Positions 1-37,074 of a DNA stretch of 64,000 nt are shown here, one piece after another (within the stretch, counting starts at the first letter, position 1; each line of letters begins with the position of its first letter). The DNA lies in the NCBI RefSeq assembly GCF_022045235.1, contig NW_027266270.1, positions 35,650,001-35,714,000 of the forward strand. Direction: 5' to 3'. The translations under genes were made by a program, and so were the position numbers. Source of the DNA: Haliotis cracherodii (lineage: Eukaryota). Under the pieces are notes generated by a model. It did not search any database and was not told the origin of the DNA. It was given only the letters and a program-made list of their open reading frames with translations.

Positions 1-1721
1 CCAATGATTTACATTGTGAGCAACAATCCGCATCGTTGGGTACAGTGGCACGCAATTAACCAAGTCGCTGATCCCGACTACCCGATCCATTTGGCTGTCT
101 CATACGACCAGCACAGGTTGCTAGGAACCTATTATAACCAGGAACCCCCATGGGGTTCATCTAAGACAATCTCTCGCAATGAACTCAGGGCGTCCACAGC
201 ATATCAAAAACCAATTCACTTGTCCAGCAGTTTGGAAGAAGCGAGCTTTGAATTATGACATTACAATATGGCTGAAAGTAGCATGGCTAAAAATTCCTCA
301 TAACATTTTTTTATCATGAAAAAACATGTTCCAAATACAAACCAGATAAATCGTCCTTTCACTATATGGGAACATTTATTACATCAACAGGGAGCAGAAC
401 ACCTCCAAGACTAACAATGATGGATTTTAAATGCCATAAACCTTCCCTTCCATTTCATTCCCTCATACAAATCCATACATATCAGACCCGAGAAGTTGGT
501 GATATTGATCCTCTGGAAATTCTCAGAACAAAATTGACCATTTCCTTTGACAGAGAGGCAGGTTATTGTAGGATTTGCTATCATGATCAACCAAATGGCA
601 TCCCACTAGCTGGGCAAACCTTTGGCCCCAAGAACCTTGCCATAGGGAGGCTAGGCTTAGACCTTTTATAATCCCAGAAGCCTCCACTGCCATATAACCT
701 CCGCAGACCCCCAAAAGATCTTTTCCTGACTTGGAGTGTCTTGTAAATTACCTACTGATCACTGTTATCCATGCAAGATGATTTCATTACCACTTTCAGC
801 TTCTGCGTCATCTGATGTCCTTTTTTGTTTTTTTTAAACAACATTTTCTGCACTTTCAGTGGGTTTGACTTATGTGTAGTCAAGGTCATTTGTGATAAAG
901 GGCAAATAGGCCACATGGAAAAATATTAAGTAAAGAGGGTTAGAGGAATCTCTTGGAAAGTAATTTTGTACATTGTCTGCCAGAAAAGGTTTTAATATGG
1001 AAGGGTTTGTCAGACTGTGCTGCCGTAAAAGCATATATTTGGGAAAAGGTCAGAGCTATTTGGGATTGTGGATTGTGTGAAGACATTTTGGGGTTTGAGT
1101 TTCAAGGAGGAATGTTGCGCTGTTTAAAGGGTAATAAATGTGCTCTTATCACACAAAACGCATGTCTAGTTGCAGACACAGCTTATATCAATGTCCATCA
1201 AAATCTGCCAGAAACCGATCTGTTGCTGATTCAACACTTTTCATTCTTTAACCCGGCTGAGAAGATTTTGAGGCAAAAGAATAATCCTTATTACTGGGAT
1301 AACTAGAACCTGTAAAAGACCATCTTTACCATTTAGTTCCAATTGGCAATCCGAGTTCGTGCCAAAAAAACAACATTTGTGTCTACTTGAACGAACTCAG
1401 CATCATTTTCAGCAGCTTTCAGTGCTCTTGGCTGAGCTGAGCTCCGAAGACAATTTAACTAGACTCGGACTTTGGACTCATGGCTCATGTTAAGGTACAC
1501 TTCTTCAACACTTCAACAAGTAAAAGAGTGAATTTTGCAGTGTTACACTAATATTTCAGTAACCCTGTAAACAACAGAATCTGAGCTTGGCAAACCAATG
1601 GTTAAAAACATGAGCTTCAGTTCTTGCTGCCAGGGTAAGACAAGATGTGGTGAGACAGGTCCTATATTGTAACCCCTTGTTAGTCATCAGTCAGCTCTTA
1701 CAATATGCATGATTTTGTTCA

Positions 1722-1904
1722 TGTGTTTGTTGTTTAACGGCGCACTCAGCAATATTCCACCTATATGACGGTGGTCTGCAAATAATCAAGTCTGGACCAG
1801 ACAATCCAGTGATTGACATCATGAGCATCAATCCACGCAATGATGGTCGACTTTTAAGTCAAGAATGGATTGCTGAAGACGTATTCTACCCCAGATCTTC
1901 AAGG
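1722..1904 (-). mobile_element. Family D retroposon (further copies ~1-155, 2258-2460, 16640-16860, 25497-25730, 35970-36310, 37143-37378, 50040-50200, 51198-51423, 54957-55140 on -; 55558-55790 on +)
   Basis: Shared GTTGTTTAACG.CGCACTCAGCAATATTCCAGCT tail, CCAGACAATCCAGTGATTGACATCATGAGC body and TTGCTGAAGAC.TATTCTA.CC head. Confidence 0.8.
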
Positions 1905-2528
1905 CTCACAATAAGTATGAGATGCTGAGCACTAAACTGTACACAGGATAAGAGAACTTAAGATGGGGCTCACCAACAAAACACTGGGATGGGAGATCGA
2001 TGGTCCACTTGATCTATCACGGAATGGTTTATCTGTTGGGCTCCAAATGAGATACTTTTTGTAAATAGTTTGATTGTTCAGCATTAGAAATTGGCACTAG
2101 TCCCGTAGTCCTTGCCAAACTGGCCAATAGTTAAGGTATCATAAGGACCAGTAGGAATTTGCCTTTTTTAAGGGTTTTTGCTTTATGTTATCATTATAAG
2201 GACTATATAGACTAAAAATGTTAGTTTCTCCTGCTGATGTTGGTTACTTCCACACTTTGCAATATTCCAGCTGGAAGAAGGCTGTATGTAATCGTGTCTG
2301 GACCAGTCAATCCAGTGATTGACATCATGAGCATTGATCTACTCAATTGGGACACGATGACTTCCACCAAGTCAGCAAGTCTGACCACTGGTAGTCCATA
2401 AGTCGTATCTTAGTGCAAGCATAGGTTCCTGAAGACAAATTCTAACCTGGTCATCTAAGTGAGTTTGACAGATAGAAGTATACTTTATCTTGTAATCTTT
2501 ATCAGTAATCTCTAACTCTCCAGTAATC

Positions 2529-2993
2529 AACCGCCTCGGTGGTGTAGTGGCAGAGTGTCCACCCGGAAAGCGTAAGGTCTGGGGTTTGATCCCCGGCTGC
2601 ATCAAACCAAAAGATTTTAAAAGATGGTATTTGTTGTTACCCTGCCAGGTGCTCCAGTGAGGTAGTCATGTTAAACTGTGGCATAGTATCTCAGTGGGCT
2701 AGCACTATAAAATCGGCATCAGTTCAAACTAGTACAAGCAGCCCCAAATACATACATGTGCATGCATGTCACTGTATAAGTGCAATAATCTTGGATTGAC
2801 ATTAAACCAGCGTTAGAAATTGGCACTGGTCCTGTAGTCCTTGCCAAACTGCCCAATGGTTAAGGTATGATAGTAGACTAGTAGAAATTTGCCCTTTTTA
2901 AGGGATTTGCTATATGTTATCATTTTAGGGTTAGTGGACGAAAACTGTTAGTTTCAACCGCTGATTAAACCCCATTTCGCCTCACCTCACCTC
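2529..2993 (+). mobile_element. tRNA-derived SINE family B (Meta/MESC-domain-like), internally deleted, with a MITE inserted in its tail
   Basis: A box GGTGTAGTGG, B box GGTTTGATCCC, ACCAAAAGATTTTAAAAGATGGTA Meta-like core, (CCTCA)n tail; homologous to the copies at 39092 and 60192. Confidence 0.85.
2808..2963. mobile_element. 156-bp MITE (CAG..CTG ends, hAT-like) nested in a SINE; sister copies 2079-2236, 36123-36277, 51543-51643
   Basis: Termini CAGCGTTAGAAA / TTTCAACCGCTG; target duplication ATTAAAC at 2801-2807 and 2964-2970. Confidence 0.85.
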
Positions 2994-3097
2994 AAGTAGT
3001 CCAGTAGACTGACCTACAATGACACTGTCCACCATATGATGTCATCAGCCCTGTGCAGAACATGGTATTTAGCATTATAAATGGAGAGTTGTCTCAC

Positions 3098-3227
3098 CTT
3101 GAGTTTCTGATAGATGACAGATGTAGTGATGGTGGAGTTGATCCTCCTCATCAGCTTCACCACCTCCGTCTCCTCCAGCAGCCCTGACTGACCCGAGTCC
3201 GCTGTCTCAAACAGCTCCAGCAACCAT
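3098..3227 (-). CDS. PLCL: PLCL exon, first EF-hand region
   Basis: (T)WLLELFETADSGQSGLLEETEVVKLMRRINSTITTSVIYQKLK, the PLC W...F..AD EF-hand pattern. 130 nt (1 nt + 43 codons); preceded by TTCCTTAACATGTGTAC, donor AAG|GTGAGA. Confidence 0.92.
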
Positions 3228-5550
3228 GTACACATGTTAAGGAAATGTACACACTTTCAAAACAACAACTTCACCGGCATCATGGCTGCTGCATGTGACA
3301 TCAGAACAGCAAAAGGCACCATTCAACACCTGCATGAGGATACACAAGTGCTGTGACATCTAAACATCTCAACTCATTGCCCTGTAAACTTAAGAAAAAC
3401 AATCCTGAATAGCAGGAGGCACCAGTTCAGTGCATACTGATATGTATACAAAGTTTCATGAAGAAATATTGATGGACCAACGGACGATAATTCAGAAAGA
3501 GGCTTGCACAACTACTTCAATCCAACTCAAGGACCGGACATAGAACTATAGTTGAAAGTGTGACAAAACGCATACATCAGTGAGTAAGTTCTGTTTAATG
3601 CCACTTTGAACAATAGGTCAGCTGAATGTGGGAGAAAAACTTGAAGGGAGGCAGGTCTTAGAATTTTCCCACTTGATGAAACCCATGAGCATGTATATGG
3701 TGCTGACAAACCCAGAACCATAATCAGGGTGAACAGGGATCCGGGCACATGATGACTGGCCTAGGTTTCAGGCTAGCATAAGGGATGCAACTCATGTGTC
3801 ATCTTAGACAACCCGCTAAATCAACTCATACATTGTAATGGCAATTAACGGTCCTATCAAATTTCCAAACTTGCTTCTACAATCAGTGGGGCTAAATCAA
3901 AATTCGAGCTTATTTAGCAGTCGAAAAAGTCATATCATTCAATACCTGTTTCTCAGCTTTTTTTCATTTGGACATGGATTTCTCAGATAATTTATCACCT
4001 AACTGCTTTTTTGAAACATGGCTTCATTTGAAAGAAAATCCTACAGCTGTGACCTGTCTGCAGATTCATTCTCTTTTAATCATTTTTGTCCCTTCCAAAT
4101 CGCCCGTCTGATCACGAAGTGCTATTTCCAGTCCTTGAAGTATATGCTCAGATCTATCTTGTTTGTTCAGCGCCACCTGAAACTAACCGATATGTACAAA
4201 TATCTTTCCAGTGATTCTGCCCGAGACCAGCACTGAATTATCTTGGTGATAGGCGTATTTTGGTAGCCCTTCTATTCTACACTGATGGAGTATAGATTAC
4301 GTCTCAAAACATCAAGCCTGCCATATCAAAATAACATCACATCCTTCAATGGAAATCTTTTTGTCATCTTGAGGCCTTGATCATGACCCAGGATCAAACA
4401 ATAAAGAAGTATTGTTAATATACTCGCATTACATCCTCAAGCTAACAATGGTGTCCCTAACGGAATCCTGGCAGACGTAAATATACCTTTGTTCATGATA
4501 ATACTAGCAGCTTGTCAAATCTAATCAAGAATTTAAAGTCCAAACCGTTGTGGCTATTTTGACATGGCATCAATGCCTGTTTTCTTTGGATACTTAAGAC
4601 CTGGCGCTCAATAAGCGCAGCTTCGTCTTTGCCCAATGTTATCAAGCCATGATGAAATATATTGTGACTGCCAAATCTATTTTTCCTTCAGCTGGTAGAG
4701 GCCCTAATCTAAGGGAGTCAATACTGCAATAACAGCTGTGATGAAGTAGGGCAAATCTCTCCTGTATAGAATAAGGATGGGAGTCACTAGAGGCCGGTGG
4801 AATGATGCTGCCCTCAACAGGAAGTGACAAACAGAGTTGTGCCCCTTGTTTGATGGCCAACTGCACTACCAGTGCATGTCTGCATAAAATCGGGGTCATG
4901 TCCCATCAGCAACTTAATGATGCCAAGAGGCTATAATCAAAAAGACATAACTTGTCTGGACATACTGTGGGTTGTGTTGCTGATAGGTTTCAGGGTGAAG
5001 TGGTAAGAGATTCTCACAAATGGGGGGAAGGTTCTGTCAGTGGGTAGATTCTGCAAAGGGGTCAGGTTATGGTAATGCCTAGATTCTATTAATGGGGTAG
5101 GTTCTGGTAATGGCTAGATTCTGATAATGAGGAAGGTTCTGGTAATGGCTAGATTCTGATAATGGGTAGGTTATGGTAATTGGTAGATTCTGGTAATGGG
5201 GTAGATTCTGATAATGTAACATTTGATTGCAGTAATTCTGAACAAGTTCTCTTTAGTTCAATTTGGCTACAAATTGGAACTCAATATAACTGACAAAAAC
5301 GTCGTAAACATTTTGTCTTGACAAGCTACAAACACTAAGAACTAGTGAAATCAGGTGTACAGTTATATTTAGTACTCTGGACTAGTCTTAGAAAATATGA
5401 ATCTCGAAGCCAGAAAAATATTGTTGCAGTTCACAATACAGACATGTTAACAGCTGTCTACTGTACCCCGATACACTGGAAATACCTTCTGACATGAGAC
5501 AAACCTGTGTGTCAACAGCCATAGAAGAGTCTGCAGCTTAAAAAGGATAT
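3228..5550 (-). other. U12-type (minor spliceosome) AT-AC intron, 2323 nt, phase 2
   Basis: 5' end ATATCCTTTT (5550-5541); branch point TTCCTTAAC (3244-3236) about 10 nt before the terminal AC (3229-3228). Removing it gives AC|A TGG = Thr-Trp in frame. Confidence 0.93.
5040..5216. repeat. Imperfect ~20-bp tandem repeat (GGTAGATTCTGRTAATGG)
   Basis: About 8 degenerate units, inside the U12 intron. Confidence 0.75.
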
Positions 5551-5590
5551 GTATCTCTCATCTGTTGGAGGTCTTCGATAGCATTGGGAG
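5551..5590 (-). CDS. PLCL: PLCL 40-nt micro-exon (PH to EF-hand linker), absent from the ORF track
   Basis: Acceptor TTTGTGTTGCAG, then (T)CT CCC AAT GCT ATC GAA GAC CTC CAA CAG ATG AGA GAT AC = SPNAIEDLQQMRD(T), then U12 donor ATATCCTTTT. Bridges phase 1 to phase 2 exactly and gives MRDTW, matching PLCL-type MR..W. Confidence 0.9.
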
Positions 5591-6961
5591 CTGCAACACA
5601 AAGCAGAATACTGACATAAACATTCTGTACAATACTGGTACAAACCTCTAAACCAATACAAATGTTATCAACAGTGTTTCATGCTACAGTCGGCTATATT
5701 CCAGCTATACCACACTGACCTATACACAAGCAAACCAGTGGTTGACAGTATAAGTACCCAAGACTGTTGCCAGTGGATATTGGTTCACCCACACCCTGTA
5801 CACTGCATGTTTGGTTACAAATTCAATTTAAAACAGTTAATCTTCAGGTAACCTAGCTCTACATAGTAAACACAGTACATCTCCTAAGCTTGTTACACCT
5901 ATATTCCAAAATTTAACAGCAGAAACAAGAATGAGAAAATGTGTCCTTGTCAAATTTCAAATTTGCTTACATCACAAAAATTGGTGAAAAATAAGGGAAC
6001 ACACACAAACAATCTTCCATTTCCCCTGTGCTAAGATTGTGCTCTCAGTGTTTCCAGACGAGCATCTCCAAAGAGAGCTCACTGTTTCCGACACAGAAGA
6101 AGATAGATGGGATTCAAACCAGGATGAGGATTTTCTAATGGTGACAACAAATCATTCTATTTCCAGAATGTCCTTCCTTGGAGGCCAAATGGCTAATGCC
6201 AGAGTTTGGAAACCATTATAACGAGTCGTGTAAACAGTGTGTAGCTCAGCTCATGGACTAATGAGCACCAGAAAGGAAAAGCTCATTCACCTGCCACGAC
6301 ATCACATTTATCATGCCTATTTCAAGGTAAGGCACAACTATAAAGTTCAACCTAAATCCTCCCGGGATCACCTCAATCGAGTTTGAAAAGTACATGAAAC
6401 AGAGGGGAAAAAATTGACAACACCATAAAGACTATTTTTCTTCAGATGGCATCTATTTTGCGTTTTCCAAGATTAAGACAAACTATACTATACATCCAAC
6501 ATCATCTGTAACAATGTGGGTTGTACTTCTTTCAAAAAACATCTATTGACAAAGGGAGGCAACTCTGCATGGGGAATTCTGGCTCCTTTGAACATTTGGC
6601 CATTTGTTGGTGTGTTTGCTTGTTGTTGAAAGCTCTCAATGCTACTGTCAGACCAATTCGACAAAGTGTGTCACTAGCCCTGCATCATCAGTCGAACCCA
6701 TTCTATAGGCACATAGCATAAGGACACCCCAAATAAAACTTGCAATAACTGTTCACTAACTAGGTTTCATGCATCATGTAAATTATGTATGATATGTATA
6801 AACATTCAGCTTTCCAAACATCATGAGTTTATTTACCTCTAAAAGAAATTACTGCATAGGACAAACATCAGATCCAATTGAATGAGTATCTTAAATTTAT
6901 GCACGAATTATACCCAAGTCAGAAAGTTGCATGGTTAGACGCAGCTAACATGAAAAAAAAG

Positions 6962-7622
6962 CCTGCACCCCTACTCTGAATCACAAGTGAACAGGTTACA
7001 TGTGCACACCCTGCACCCCTACTCTGGATCTGCAAGTGAACAGGTTACATGTGCACACCCTGCACCCCTGCTCTGGATCACAAGTGAACAGGTTACATGT
7101 GCACACCCTGCACCCCTACTCTGAATCACAAATGAACAGGTTACATGTGCACACCCTGCACCCCTACTCTGGATCACAAGTGAACAGGTTACATGTGCAC
7201 ACCCTGCACCCCTACTCTGAATCACAAATGAACAGGTTACATGTGCACACCCTGCACCCCTACTCTGAATCACAAATGAACAGGTTACATGTGCACACCC
7301 TGCACCCCTACTCTGAATCACAAGTGAACAGGTTACATGTGCACACACCCTGCACCCCTACTCTGGATCCGCCAGTGAACAGGTTACATGTGCACACCCT
7401 GCACCCCTGCTCTGGATCACAAGTGAACAGGTTACATGTGCACACCCTGCACCCCTACTCTGGATCACAAATGAACAGGTTACATGTGCACGCCCTGCAC
7501 CCCTACTCTGAATCACAAATGAACAGGTTACATGTGCACACCCTGCACCCCTACTCTGGATCTGCAAGTGAACAGGTTACATATGCACACCCTGCACCCC
7601 TACTCTGAATCACAAGTGAACA
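6962..7622. repeat. 48-bp minisatellite, ~14 copies
   Basis: Unit CAAGTGAACAGGTTACATGTGCACACCCTGCACCCCTACTCTGRATCA. Confidence 0.97.
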
Positions 7623-8175
7623 TGTGTGGACCAAGAACAGAGGTGAAGCAAACTGCTCTTGGTTTGATTCTTTTCATGTGTACAATGTGGGAAACCCATT
7701 CCTGGCTTTCCCACACCGGAATACTGCCAAATCACAAGGCCAAGCCCGACAGACCAGTCAAAATCTGCCACTATCCCTTCACAACCAATAAATTCCACAG
7801 CAAAATGAAATTTCCACCACAACCAACTAACCCATCATTTGTCTGGGGCACATCAAATCTTTTAAGTGTATTCATGAAGACATGTTCAGCTCCAAATACT
7901 TGCTATTGAAAATCTTTATTACATCCCTGGCCAATAATTAAACGAATGCAGTGTATGCCATCCCTCACCGCCATCATGAATACTAGAGTGTCCTATTTTT
8001 ATGCAGAACCAATATTGGTATTGATGTAATTCCAATCAACCACTTTCCAATTTTCCCCGACAGGGTTCCACAAACTTAAGTCTATAAGTTGCTGAAGAGC
8101 ACTTGGCAAACTCATTTTCTGCAAGACTTCAAGTTAACTAAGCTTAATGGTGGCTGTACCATGACACAAACTTAC

Positions 8176-8394
8176 AGGTCTGAGATTTGGAACTGGCATT
8201 AATGAGACAGGTAAGACCAGTAACCCATATATTCGCCTCATCCGGCGTATTGGCGATCAGATCCATCGACTCGAACTCCTCTCCAAAGATTATGGAAAAA
8301 GCGCATTCGTCGGGGTAAATCCCTGCAATTTCCTTGTTCCGAAGAGCATCTGTGGTTTTTCCTTGCCGGACCTCTTTGACTGATCGAACCGCAA
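8176..8394 (-). CDS. PLCL: PLCL exon, C-terminal half of PH domain
   Basis: (I)AVRSVKEVRQGKTTDALRNKEIAGIYPDECAFSIIFGEEFESMDLIANTPDEANIWVTGLTCLINASSKSQT, with PLC PH motifs KEVR.GK.T, CAFSII.G and LDL.A......NIWVTGL. Acceptor TTACAG, donor GTAAGT; 219 nt. Split codon A|TT=Ile joins the previous exon in frame. Confidence 0.95.
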
Positions 8395-9043
8395 CTGTAA
8401 CGACAAATGGTTGAGATTGGTTAGAGTAATTACATGGGATGGTGTCAAATGACAGCAACAGGTTGTCAGAGAGCCACCTGGAGGGAAATTATGTCACAAT
8501 GGTTATGTCCAAGATTGTGGTTTAATCAATCTTATTGAATTGTCTGACAGGTATCTGTTGCAGATCTGTGTCAAAGAAACATCACAAAAGGATTCACTGA
8601 TAAACATGGATGCAGGTGGTAATGTAATTATTCCATGTCACCATACAATGCTGACAAGAATGTTGGAGAATGTTATTAGAATCTTGCCAGGACAATAACA
8701 GTTTTGGGGAAGTTTTATGAGCAAGATATTGATTGATATTTTACTTGGTCATGGTGTGTTATTGAGCAGTTCATGAAAGTCCCCAGGTCCTTGTGGGCTG
8801 CCTATATTCAAATTGCATAAGACAAGGGGCCGGTCATTTATTATAGAGGGGGTGGGGGTTTTGGGGGTGTTGGGGTGGAGGGTCAAGGTCAGAGGGAATC
8901 AGATTGAATCAAGGGAGGATGTTCAGATGTTGGATGTTTTCCATGACACAAACAGATAATCTGTTCAAAACAACTCAATCCCTATAAATCTGTTCATCGT
9001 CTTCAGTGCTTGAAATTTAACATGATTGTCAAGGGGTCATCGA

Positions 9044-36924: not shown

Positions 36925-37074
36925 TTCTTGCTTTGTGCGCTTTCTTTGACGTGGGCTGCCATCGTATCTCTGTCATGTCATTGCTGAGCGAGAAGAAGCG
37001 GTGGTACTGCCGACTGTTGGATCGCACCTTTATCAACTCACTGCCATTCTGCATGTACGCCAGGCAGTCCTGGG
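36925..37074 (-). CDS. PLCL: PLC-like protein (PLCL/PRIP) exon, N-terminal half of PH domain
   Basis: Translates to QDCLAYMQNGSELIKVRSNSRQYHRFFSLSNDMTEIRWQPTSKKAHKAR, closely resembling the PLCL1/2 PH domain as recalled (DC..M.EGSELKKVRSNSRIYHRYF...RW.PSKK). Acceptor TGTTTTGTGTTTTCAG, donor GTAAGT; 150 nt, phase 1/1. Confidence 0.95.

What the first reader, a model, noticed from the sequence alone, without database searches (positions are those of the whole stretch)
3228..5590. U12-type AT-AC minor intron directly after a 40-nt micro-exon in an invertebrate PLCL gene
Seen in the sequence: consensus U11 donor ATATCCTTTT, consensus U12 branch point TTCCTTAAC and terminal AC. A hidden 40-nt exon plus this AT-AC intron joins the phase-1 PH exon to the EF-hand exon in frame (SKSQT-SPNAIEDLQQMRDT-WLLELF). 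Established: AT-AC U12 introns are very rare, can be rate-limiting for expression, and are often mis-annotated by GT-AG-only predictors. Inference: the micro-exon has a U2 acceptor and a U12 donor, so it needs both spliceosomes. As recalled, vertebrate PLCL1/2 encode this region in one large exon, so this may be an ancestral PLC-family minor intron lost in vertebrate PLCL.
Basis: partly seen in the sequence, partly recalled or inferred. Interest (0 to 1): 0.8.

Follow-up and report, generated by a model that had tools for sequence, protein, structure and literature searches.

The report
Real AT-AC minor intron in PLCL
A mollusc phospholipase-C-like (PLCL) gene really contains a 40-base exon followed by a rare AT-AC "minor" intron, and transcripts use both, but this is the minor intron already known from the phospholipase C family, so it is a solid yet ordinary find.

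Summary
On the minus strand, the second PH exon (8394-8176, GTAAGT donor) is followed by a 2,585-nt GT-AG intron. Next come a 40-nt exon (5590-5551) and a 2,323-nt AT-AC intron (5550-3228), then the first EF-hand exon (3227-3098). The AT-AC intron has donor ATATCCTTTT and branch site TTCCTTAAC, with 8 nt between the branch site and the terminal AC.

Transcript contigs from four runs in four studies join 8176|5590 and 5551|3227, as predicted. No alternative joint was seen. The PH exon is single-copy in the genome, so a retrocopy does not explain the joined form. The genome encodes U11 and U12 snRNAs with matching pairing elements.

The gene is a PLCL/PRIP orthologue. A PLC-delta-like paralogue in the same genome has an AT-AC U12 intron at the identical codon and phase, but without the micro-exon. 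Read-through gene models from a sea cucumber and a millipede, plus two unnamed contigs, show the same TATCCT donor at this place.

Published lists name PLCB1-4, PLCD1/3/4, PLCH1/2 and PLCZ1 as minor-intron genes in human and mouse, but not PLCL1/2. A vertebrate-type PLCL open frame crosses the site uninterrupted. The result is a new member of a known kind. Its main practical value is explaining broken PLCL gene models.

The parts
36925..37074 (-). First PH-domain exon of the PLCL-like gene (…DCLAYMQNGSELIKVRSNSRQYHRFFSLSNDMTEIRWQPTSKKAHKAR). Acceptor ttttcag, donor GTAAGT. Boundaries read from sequence context, not from RNA.
   Evidence: tblastn of PLCL homologues with flanking context; open frame
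8176..8394 (-). Second PH-domain exon, 219 nt, phase 1 at both ends. Matches Pfam PH_12 positions 64-131. Ends ACC T|GTAAGT.
   Evidence: transcript contig pieces 8176-8394 in four runs; single copy in the genome
5591..8175 (-). U2-type GT-AG intron, 2,585 nt. Contains a 48-bp tandem repeat (x13.7) at 6962-7622.
   Evidence: joint 5590|8176 with ends CT..AC on + (GT..AG on -) and no ambiguity, in 4 runs; tandem repeat
5551..5590 (-). 40-nt micro-exon encoding (S)PNAIEDLQQMRD(T), the linker between the PH domain and EF-hand 1. It has a U2-type acceptor upstream (pyrimidine-rich tract + CAG) and a U12-type donor downstream.
   Evidence: contig pieces 5549-5590 lying contiguously between the flanking exons; homologous peptides in Dreissena (TPEALEEMQQMRD), Holothuria (SPEAVERNQDMRDR) and a stomatopod (SPDAVENNQTLRDT)
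3228..5550 (-). U12-type AT-AC intron, 2,323 nt, phase 2. It splits codon AC|A (Thr) immediately before the conserved EF-hand Trp.
   Evidence: joint skipping 2,323 nt in 4 runs from 4 studies, with AT-AC the only canonical cut within the 5-nt ambiguity; sequence
5541..5550 (-). U12 5' splice site ATATCCTTTT. The nine intron letters ATATCCTTT are identical to donors scored 99-100 in the MIDB tables. CCTTTT is complementary to the AAAAGG at the 5' end of this genome's U11 snRNA.
3236..3244 (-). U12 branch-point sequence TTCCTTAAC. It is the only TCCTTAAC in the window, lies 8 nt upstream of the terminal AC (3229-3228), and is complementary to GTAAGGAA of this genome's U12 snRNA.
3098..3227 (-). 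First EF-hand exon, 130 nt (WLLELFETADSGQSGLLEETEVVKLMRRINSTITTSVIYQKLK), with donor GTGAGA.
   Evidence: weak EF-hand_7 match; contig pieces 3097-3225

Best explanation
This is a genuine, apparently constitutively spliced U12-dependent (minor-spliceosome) AT-AC intron of 2,323 nt in the PLCL/PRIP orthologue of a mollusc, probably a bivalve. It lies in phase 2, in the codon just before the first EF-hand tryptophan. It is preceded by a 40-nt exon whose upstream boundary is an ordinary U2-type acceptor.

Shown:
- Both junctions occur in transcripts.
- The signals match the U12 consensus.
- U11 and U12 snRNA genes with complementary elements are in the genome.
- A PLC-delta-like paralogue in the same genome has the same intron position, phase and AT-AC type.

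Inferred:
- U11 pairs with ATATCCTTTT and U12 pairs with TTCCTTAAC.
- The 40-nt exon is defined across the two spliceosomes (U2 components at its 3' splice site, U11/U12 at its 5' splice site).
- Skipping the exon would shift the frame, because 40 is not a multiple of 3.
- Retaining the intron would stop translation after ...RDTYPF*, so correct PLCL expression depends on minor splicing.

Evolutionarily, this is the old PLC-family minor intron at the PH/EF junction. It is retained in invertebrate PLCL and absent from vertebrate PLCL1/2.
For: - Sequence and translations.
- Transcripts: contigs from runs X1, X14, X5 and X13 (4 studies, 3 organism labels) carry PH exon, 40-nt exon and EF exon contiguously. 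Joints are 5590|8176 (GT..AG) and a 2,323-nt skip (AT..AC). Intron depth is zero outside repeats.
- No retrocopy: the PH exon matches once in the 1.18-Gb genome.
- Machinery: U12 (127 bits, 2 copies) and U11 (105 bits, 3 copies) genes carry GTAAGGAA and AAAAGG elements.
- Paralogue on contig C11...ETD-AG|ATATCCTTGAAT ... CCTTGAC-cttggc-AC|A TGG GTG, with the same phase, the same codon before W and the same 8-nt spacing.
- Orthologues: read-through models end ...REK|YPLI (millipede)...MRDR|YPLL (sea cucumber)...LRDQ|YPSL and ...HRDQ|YPCIQ (two unnamed contigs). Each reads as x|TATCCT at the same place.
- Literature: the PLC family is minor-intron rich (PMC6865273). The MIDB tables list PLCB1-4, PLCD1/3/4, PLCH1/2 and PLCZ1, with AT-type donors in PLCD3 and PLCH1 (PMC6717393). 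The PLC-delta U12 intron lies between exons 3 and 4 (PMC2603472).
- All other donors mapped in this gene are GT.
Against: - The runs are labelled only 'RNA?' by guess. Their RNA nature is inferred from the spliced contigs and empty introns.
- Contigs cannot show minor isoforms, retention level or strand.
- The AT-AC cut is chosen from six equally fitting cuts because it is the only known splice pair.
- Dependence on the minor spliceosome is not tested experimentally.
- The branch A lies only 9-10 nt from the 3' splice site, at the short end of the usual range (own knowledge). The paralogue has the same spacing.
- The exact codon of the human PLCD1 intron is inferred, not read from a genome.
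Confidence: 0.93

Rival explanations
1. The AT-AC intron is removed by the major (U2) spliceosome, as a rare U2-type AT-AC intron, not by the minor one.
For: AT-AC termini alone do not define the spliceosome type (own knowledge).
Against: The donor is the full U12 consensus ATATCCTTT. U2-type AT-AC donors resemble AT-AAGT instead (own knowledge). A perfect TTCCTTAAC lies 8 nt from the 3' end, with no polypyrimidine tract. The paralogue and orthologues keep TATCCT at the site. U11 and U12 genes are present with matching elements.
Confidence: 0.02
2. The joined contigs do not come from this locus's mRNA. They come from a processed retrocopy, a contaminant, or an assembly chimera.
For: The runs are only guessed to be RNA, and contigs can be chimeric.
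Against: The same two joints occur in four runs from four studies, in contigs of 706 to 3,814 nt with 0-3 mismatches. The PH exon has a single genomic match. The encoded peptide matches orthologues across phyla.
Confidence: 0.02
3. The micro-exon and minor intron form a regulated switch rather than a constitutive junction. Substantial intron retention or exon skipping in some tissues would give a PH-only product or a decay target.
For: Minor introns are often retained in a tissue-dependent way (PMC6717393, the paper read). Retention here stops translation after RDTYPF*. Skipping the exon shifts the frame.
Against: No alternative joint or intron coverage appears in four runs, although contigs drop rare forms. 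A GT donor on the PH exon cannot pair with a U12-type AC acceptor, so simple skipping is mechanistically unlikely (own knowledge).
Confidence: 0.15

Closest known systems
Minor (U12-type) intron at the PH/EF-hand junction of mammalian PLC-delta/eta/zeta genes (e.g. PLCD1 intron 3; AT-type in PLCD3 and PLCH1)
   Same: Both belong to the same gene superfamily and sit in the same linker between the PH domain and EF-hand 1. In PLCD1 the exon letters GCA before the donor fit a phase-2 split of the His codon before W; here the split is AC|A before W. The U12 donor TATCCTT is shared, and the AT subtype also occurs in PLCD3 and PLCH1.
   Different: Here the host gene is PLCL, which is not a minor-intron gene in human or mouse. 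The linker is a separate 40-nt exon. PLCD1 uses GT-AG termini. The exact mammalian codon was inferred, not read from a genome.
AT-AC U12 intron of the PLC-delta-like paralogue in the same genome (G000:C11:19676168-19677845)
   Same: Same phase, same codon before the EF-hand W, an ATATCCTT donor, a CCTTGAC branch site 8 nt before the terminal AC, and similar size (1,678 nt against 2,323 nt).
   Different: In the paralogue the linker is fused to the PH exon, so there is no upstream U2 intron and no micro-exon. Its branch site is one letter further from consensus.
Exon definition across the two spliceosomes (a U12 5' splice site downstream of a U2 3' splice site), described for AT-AC introns in the 1990s (own knowledge, not checked here)
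   Same: An internal exon bounded by a U2-type acceptor and a U12-type donor.
   Different: The exon here is only 40 nt, and no functional data exist for it.
Vertebrate PLCL1/PLCL2 (PRIP-1/2)
   Same: Orthologous architecture: PH-EF-X-Y-C2 plus a C-terminal extension, with the homologous linker ...MR.SW....
   Different: The vertebrate-type gene has no intron here: a 479-codon open frame runs from PH to X on a genomic contig. Its X domain reads IIYTGHT, whereas the bivalve gene keeps IYHGHT.

Membership tests
U12-type (minor spliceosome) intron, AT-AC subtype | 5' splice site /ATATCCTT | tested here: met
   ATATCCTTTT at 5550-5541. The same nine letters score 99-100 in the MIDB tables.
U12-type (minor spliceosome) intron, AT-AC subtype | Branch-point sequence TTCCTTRAY close to the 3' splice site, terminal AC, no need for a polypyrimidine tract | tested here: met
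   TTCCTTAAC at 3244-3236, then 8 nt, then AC at 3229-3228, with no AG nearby. The 12-mer differs in one flanking letter from one scored 97.7 in MIDB.
U12-type (minor spliceosome) intron, AT-AC subtype | Actually excised at these boundaries in RNA | tested here: met
   A 2,323-nt skip in contigs of four runs from four studies. AT-AC is the only canonical cut within the 5-nt ambiguity.
U12-type (minor spliceosome) intron, AT-AC subtype | Splicing depends on U11/U12/U4atac/U6atac snRNPs | not testable with these tools
   Only the prerequisite was shown: U12 and U11 genes are present in the genome with GTAAGGAA and AAAAGG elements. U4atac and U6atac were not searched.
PLCL / PRIP (phospholipase C-like) orthologue | PH-EF-X-Y-C2 core plus the long C-terminal extension; nearest named relatives are PLCL | tested here: met
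   Exon-by-exon tblastn against amphioxus and stomatopod PLCL covers residues ~90-1059, including the post-C2 extension. Names are; Pfam matches.
PLCL / PRIP (phospholipase C-like) orthologue | Catalytically inactive X domain (loss of the second catalytic His, as in vertebrate PRIP) | tested here: not met
   The bivalve exons read SSHNT and EPVIYHGHTLTS, like active PLC-delta1 (iiyhgytfts). The vertebrate-type PLCL reads IIYTGHTMTS. The gene is a PLCL orthologue by architecture, but the 'inactive' label is not supported by sequence.
Conserved PLC-family minor intron at the PH/EF junction | Same position and phase in paralogues and orthologues | tested here: met
   The same-genome PLC-delta-like paralogue has it in phase 2, in the codon before W, with AT-AC termini. 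Orthologue read-throughs show x|TATCCT. For mammalian PLCD1 the evidence is only consistent, not exact.

The most novel reading that the evidence does not exclude
The unit 'U2 acceptor, ~40-nt linker exon, U12 donor' may be an old, conserved arrangement in invertebrate PLCL. It is seen here, apparently in an unnamed contig with a ~75-nt upstream intron, and possibly in a sea cucumber. It could act as an obligatory two-spliceosome checkpoint that gates expression of a PLCL protein. Unlike vertebrate PRIP, that protein still has both catalytic histidines and may be an active phospholipase C.
Probability: 0.12. Interest if true: 0.45.

Novelty: new member of a known kind. Interest (0 to 1): 0.27.

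Why it matters
The finding is a clean, transcript-supported AT-AC minor intron in a mollusc. It shows that the well-known PLC-family minor intron predates the PLC-delta/PLCL split and was lost on the vertebrate PLCL branch.

The practical value is for annotation. Four public PLCL gene models appear to break at or beside this intron:
- Dreissena KAH3894174.1 stops at the micro-exon.
- Sinanodonta KAL3841875.1 reads into the intron after the PH exon.
- Holothuria KAJ8048666.1 reads into the U12 donor.
- Chamberlinius GAB6030650.1 also reads into the U12 donor.

Predictors limited to GT-AG introns would be expected to truncate this gene in this way. The finding does not open a new question for splicing biology.

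Tried and rejected
Orthologous genomic loci (Dreissena, amphioxus, gar and others) could not be fetched, so conservation was inferred from read-through gene models.
Only the C11 paralogue was examined.
- The word search with the 80-aa open frame around the EF exon, meant to find genomic fragments showing FLN (= TTCCTTAAC) in other species, found nothing.
- The PH_12 family search found only this gene and one other PH exon on C2.
- Rfam and tRNA scans of 1-9000 found nothing.
- Levine & Durbin 2001 is not held. One MIG paper had no supplements held. A search for the PLCL1 gene structure gave nothing.
- The PDB search with the paralogue exon gave only calmodulin-like EF-hands.
- A motif-only chance test showed the donor/acceptor pair alone is not significant (57 of 300 simulations). 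The case therefore rests on placement and RNA.
- The N-terminal exon (KKTVSFSSMP motif) was not found in the window.
All searches were exon by exon.
- The primer sequences printed in PMC2603472 were only read.

Full report
**Observation**

- A pyrimidine-rich tract ends in CAG at 5593-5591.
- A 40-nt exon follows: CTCCCAATGCTATCGAAGACCTCCAACAGATGAGAGATAC (5590-5551).
- The donor ATATCCTTTT is at 5550-5541.
- The branch site TTCCTTAAC is at 3244-3236. Eight letters (ATGTGTAC) follow, ending in AC at 3229-3228.
- The next exon then starts A TGG TTG CTG at 3227.

The upstream PH exon ends ACC T|GTAAGT at 8176. The translations are ...CLINASSKSQT, PNAIEDLQQMRD and WLLELFETADSGQSG.... The three pieces join in frame through the split codons T|CT (Ser) and AC|A (Thr). 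One correction: the PH exon begins at 8394, because the AG acceptor is at 8396-8395.

**Chance**

The motifs alone are weak evidence.
- ATATCCTT occurs 5 times in the window against 2.5 expected.
- TCCTTAAC occurs once against 1.6 expected.
- A donor/acceptor-like pair within 10 kb arose in 57 of 300 simulated windows.

The signal lies in the placement. The only TCCTTAAC in 64 kb sits 8 nt before an AC that abuts a conserved coding exon with no AG nearby. The donor closes a 40-nt frame that restores the reading frame.

**RNA evidence**

The PH exon was held completely by 20 public runs whose contig totals (60-120 Mb) fit transcriptomes. I laid four runs from four studies on 3000-8500. Each has one contig (706 to 3,814 nt, with 0-3 mismatches) in which 8394-8176, 5590-5549 and 3225-3097 are contiguous.

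- The joint 5590|8176 is unambiguous and reads GT..AG on the minus strand.
- The other joint skips 2,323 nt. It has a 5-letter ambiguity, because TACAT occurs on both sides.
- I enumerated the six possible cuts. Only 5550..3228 gives a known splice pair (AT..AC), and none gives GT-AG or GC-AG.
- Intron bins have zero depth except at repeats.
- No joint skipping the micro-exon was listed.
- The PH exon matches only once in the 1.18-Gb genome, so a retrocopy is not the source.

There are caveats. The runs are only guessed to be RNA, and contigs hide rare isoforms and retention levels.

**Machinery**

The genome carries two U12 genes (127 and 124 bits) and three U11 genes (100-105 bits).
- The U12 gene reads ...AATGAGTAAGGAAAATAACG. 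Its GTAAGGAA element is complementary to TTCCTTA-C with one A bulged.
- The U11 gene begins TAAAAGGGCC. Its AAAAGG is complementary to the CCTTTT of the donor.

U4atac and U6atac were not searched.

**The gene**

A full HMMER scan with the PH exon found 304 relatives.
- The closest named relatives are bivalves: Dreissena KAH3894174.1 and Sinanodonta KAL3841875.1.
- Full-length relatives are RefSeq 'inactive phospholipase C-like protein 1/2' from amphioxus, a stomatopod, a tick and gar.

Exon-by-exon tblastn of two such proteins against the window plus 100 kb fetched downstream maps PH, EF, X, Y, C2 and the PLCL-type C-terminal extension. These run from window position ~37,074 to contig C7:35,560,705, a span of more than 126 kb. 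Every other donor seen in the gene is GT. The window holds only the 5' part of the gene.

**Conservation**

*Paralogue.* A weak EF-exon match on contig C11, 4 kb upstream of a PLC X-domain hit, turned out to be EF-hand 1 of a PLC-delta-like gene.
- Its acceptor reads ...tgaCCTTGACcttggcAC|A TGG GTG.
- Its upstream exon ends ...GAG ACA GAC AG|ATATCCTTGAAT.
- It shares phase 2, the codon before W, the AT-AC termini and the 8-nt branch-to-end spacing with the window gene.
- It has no separate micro-exon.

*Orthologues.* Gene models or open-frame calls that read through the donor give the following:
- REK|YPLI (millipede);
- MRDR|YPLL (sea cucumber);
- LRDQ|YPSL and HRDQ|YPCIQ (two unnamed contigs).

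Each corresponds to x|TATCCT at the same codon. One fragment also reads ...FCCCFF before its linker peptide. That fits a short upstream intron and a micro-exon there too.

*Literature.*
- The PLC family is cited as minor-intron rich, at 60% of genes (PMC6865273).
- The MIDB supplements list PLCB1-4, PLCD1/3/4, PLCH1/2 and PLCZ1. PLCD3 and PLCH1 have AT-type donors (CCA|ATATCC...). The PLCD1 donor is GCA|GTATCC. PLCL1/2 do not appear (PMC6717393).
- PMC2603472 uses the PLC-delta exon 3-4 U12 intron. Its printed primers encode IIHHSGS and CLRKAD.
- In PLC-delta1 the sequence HWIHSCLRKAD aligns with TWLKEIF of PLCL.

These data fit a phase-2 split of the His codon before W, but they do not prove it.

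*Vertebrate PLCL.* An unnamed open-frame call on a 1.2-Mb NCBI contig (P0088) runs 479 codons without interruption. It extends from the PH domain through ...DNMRASWLGDLF... into the X domain.

**Mechanism**

- Shown: both junctions are used in transcripts, the signals match the U12 consensus, and the snRNA genes are present.
- Inferred: U11 and U12 recognise the donor and branch site.
- Inferred: the 40-nt exon is defined by U2-type factors at its acceptor and by U11/U12 at its donor.
- Inferred: the PH exon's GT donor cannot use the U12-type AC acceptor directly, so the micro-exon is obligatory.
- Inferred: skipping the exon would shift the frame, and intron retention would terminate translation after RDTYPF*.

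**Verdict**

The novelty is modest, because this is a further member of the known PLC-family minor introns.

The most useful outcome is for annotation. Four public PLCL models break at or next to this intron.

A side observation is that the bivalve X domain keeps both catalytic histidines (SSHNT, IYHGHT). The vertebrate-type PLCL reads IYTGHT. The 'inactive' label may therefore not apply to this gene.

**Limits**

- Earlier scan notes mention other AT-AC introns in this genome, but they did not affect this reading.

Noticed in passing
outside the window: G000:C7:35604898-35605023, 35586842-35586979 (loci L012, L010): The X-domain exons of this 'inactive PLC-like' gene keep both catalytic histidine motifs (SSHNT and EPVIYHGHTLTS), as in active PLC-delta1. 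A vertebrate-type PLCL open frame reads IIYTGHTMTS instead. The invertebrate orthologue may be catalytically active.
   Followed up: partly
window 3552-3740 (inside the U12 intron): A short repeat (pieces 3673-3740) is matched at 90-95% identity by hundreds of transcript contigs, with summed depth of 26,000-61,000 in all four runs. It is an abundantly transcribed interspersed element, perhaps SINE-like. It gave no tRNA or Rfam match.
   Followed up: partly
window 6962-7622: A 48-bp tandem repeat, 13.7 copies at 93% match, lies inside the U2-type intron upstream of the micro-exon.
   Followed up: no
window 5024-5216: A degenerate 17/35/70-nt tandem repeat (ACCATTACCAGAATCTA-like) lies about 330 nt downstream of the U12 donor, inside the minor intron.
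   Followed up: no
G000:C11:19676168-19677845 (loci L021/L020): A PLC-delta-like paralogue has an AT-AC U12 intron (ATATCCTTG ... CCTTGAC-8 nt-AC) at the same codon before the EF-hand W. No RNA evidence was gathered for it.
   Followed up: partly
public protein records P0012, P0013, P0043, P0064: PLCL gene models of Dreissena polymorpha, Sinanodonta woodiana, Chamberlinius hualienensis and Holothuria leucospilota are truncated or read into intron at or beside this minor intron. These are likely annotation errors.
   Followed up: partly
protein P0123 (Logan contig, 1,294 nt) and P0120 (NCBI contig): One unnamed genomic fragment reads MRDRWLRETF without interruption, so the intron is absent there. 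Another reads LRER|FHFF, which fits a GT donor at the same phase. These are possible examples of loss and of U12-to-U2 conversion in other lineages. The taxa are unknown.
   Followed up: no
G000:C80:5298045-5299643 and G000:C34:72773349-72777125: The U12 snRNA genes (2 copies, 1.45 kb apart) and the U11 snRNA genes (3 copies within 3.8 kb) are arranged in small tandem clusters.
   Followed up: no
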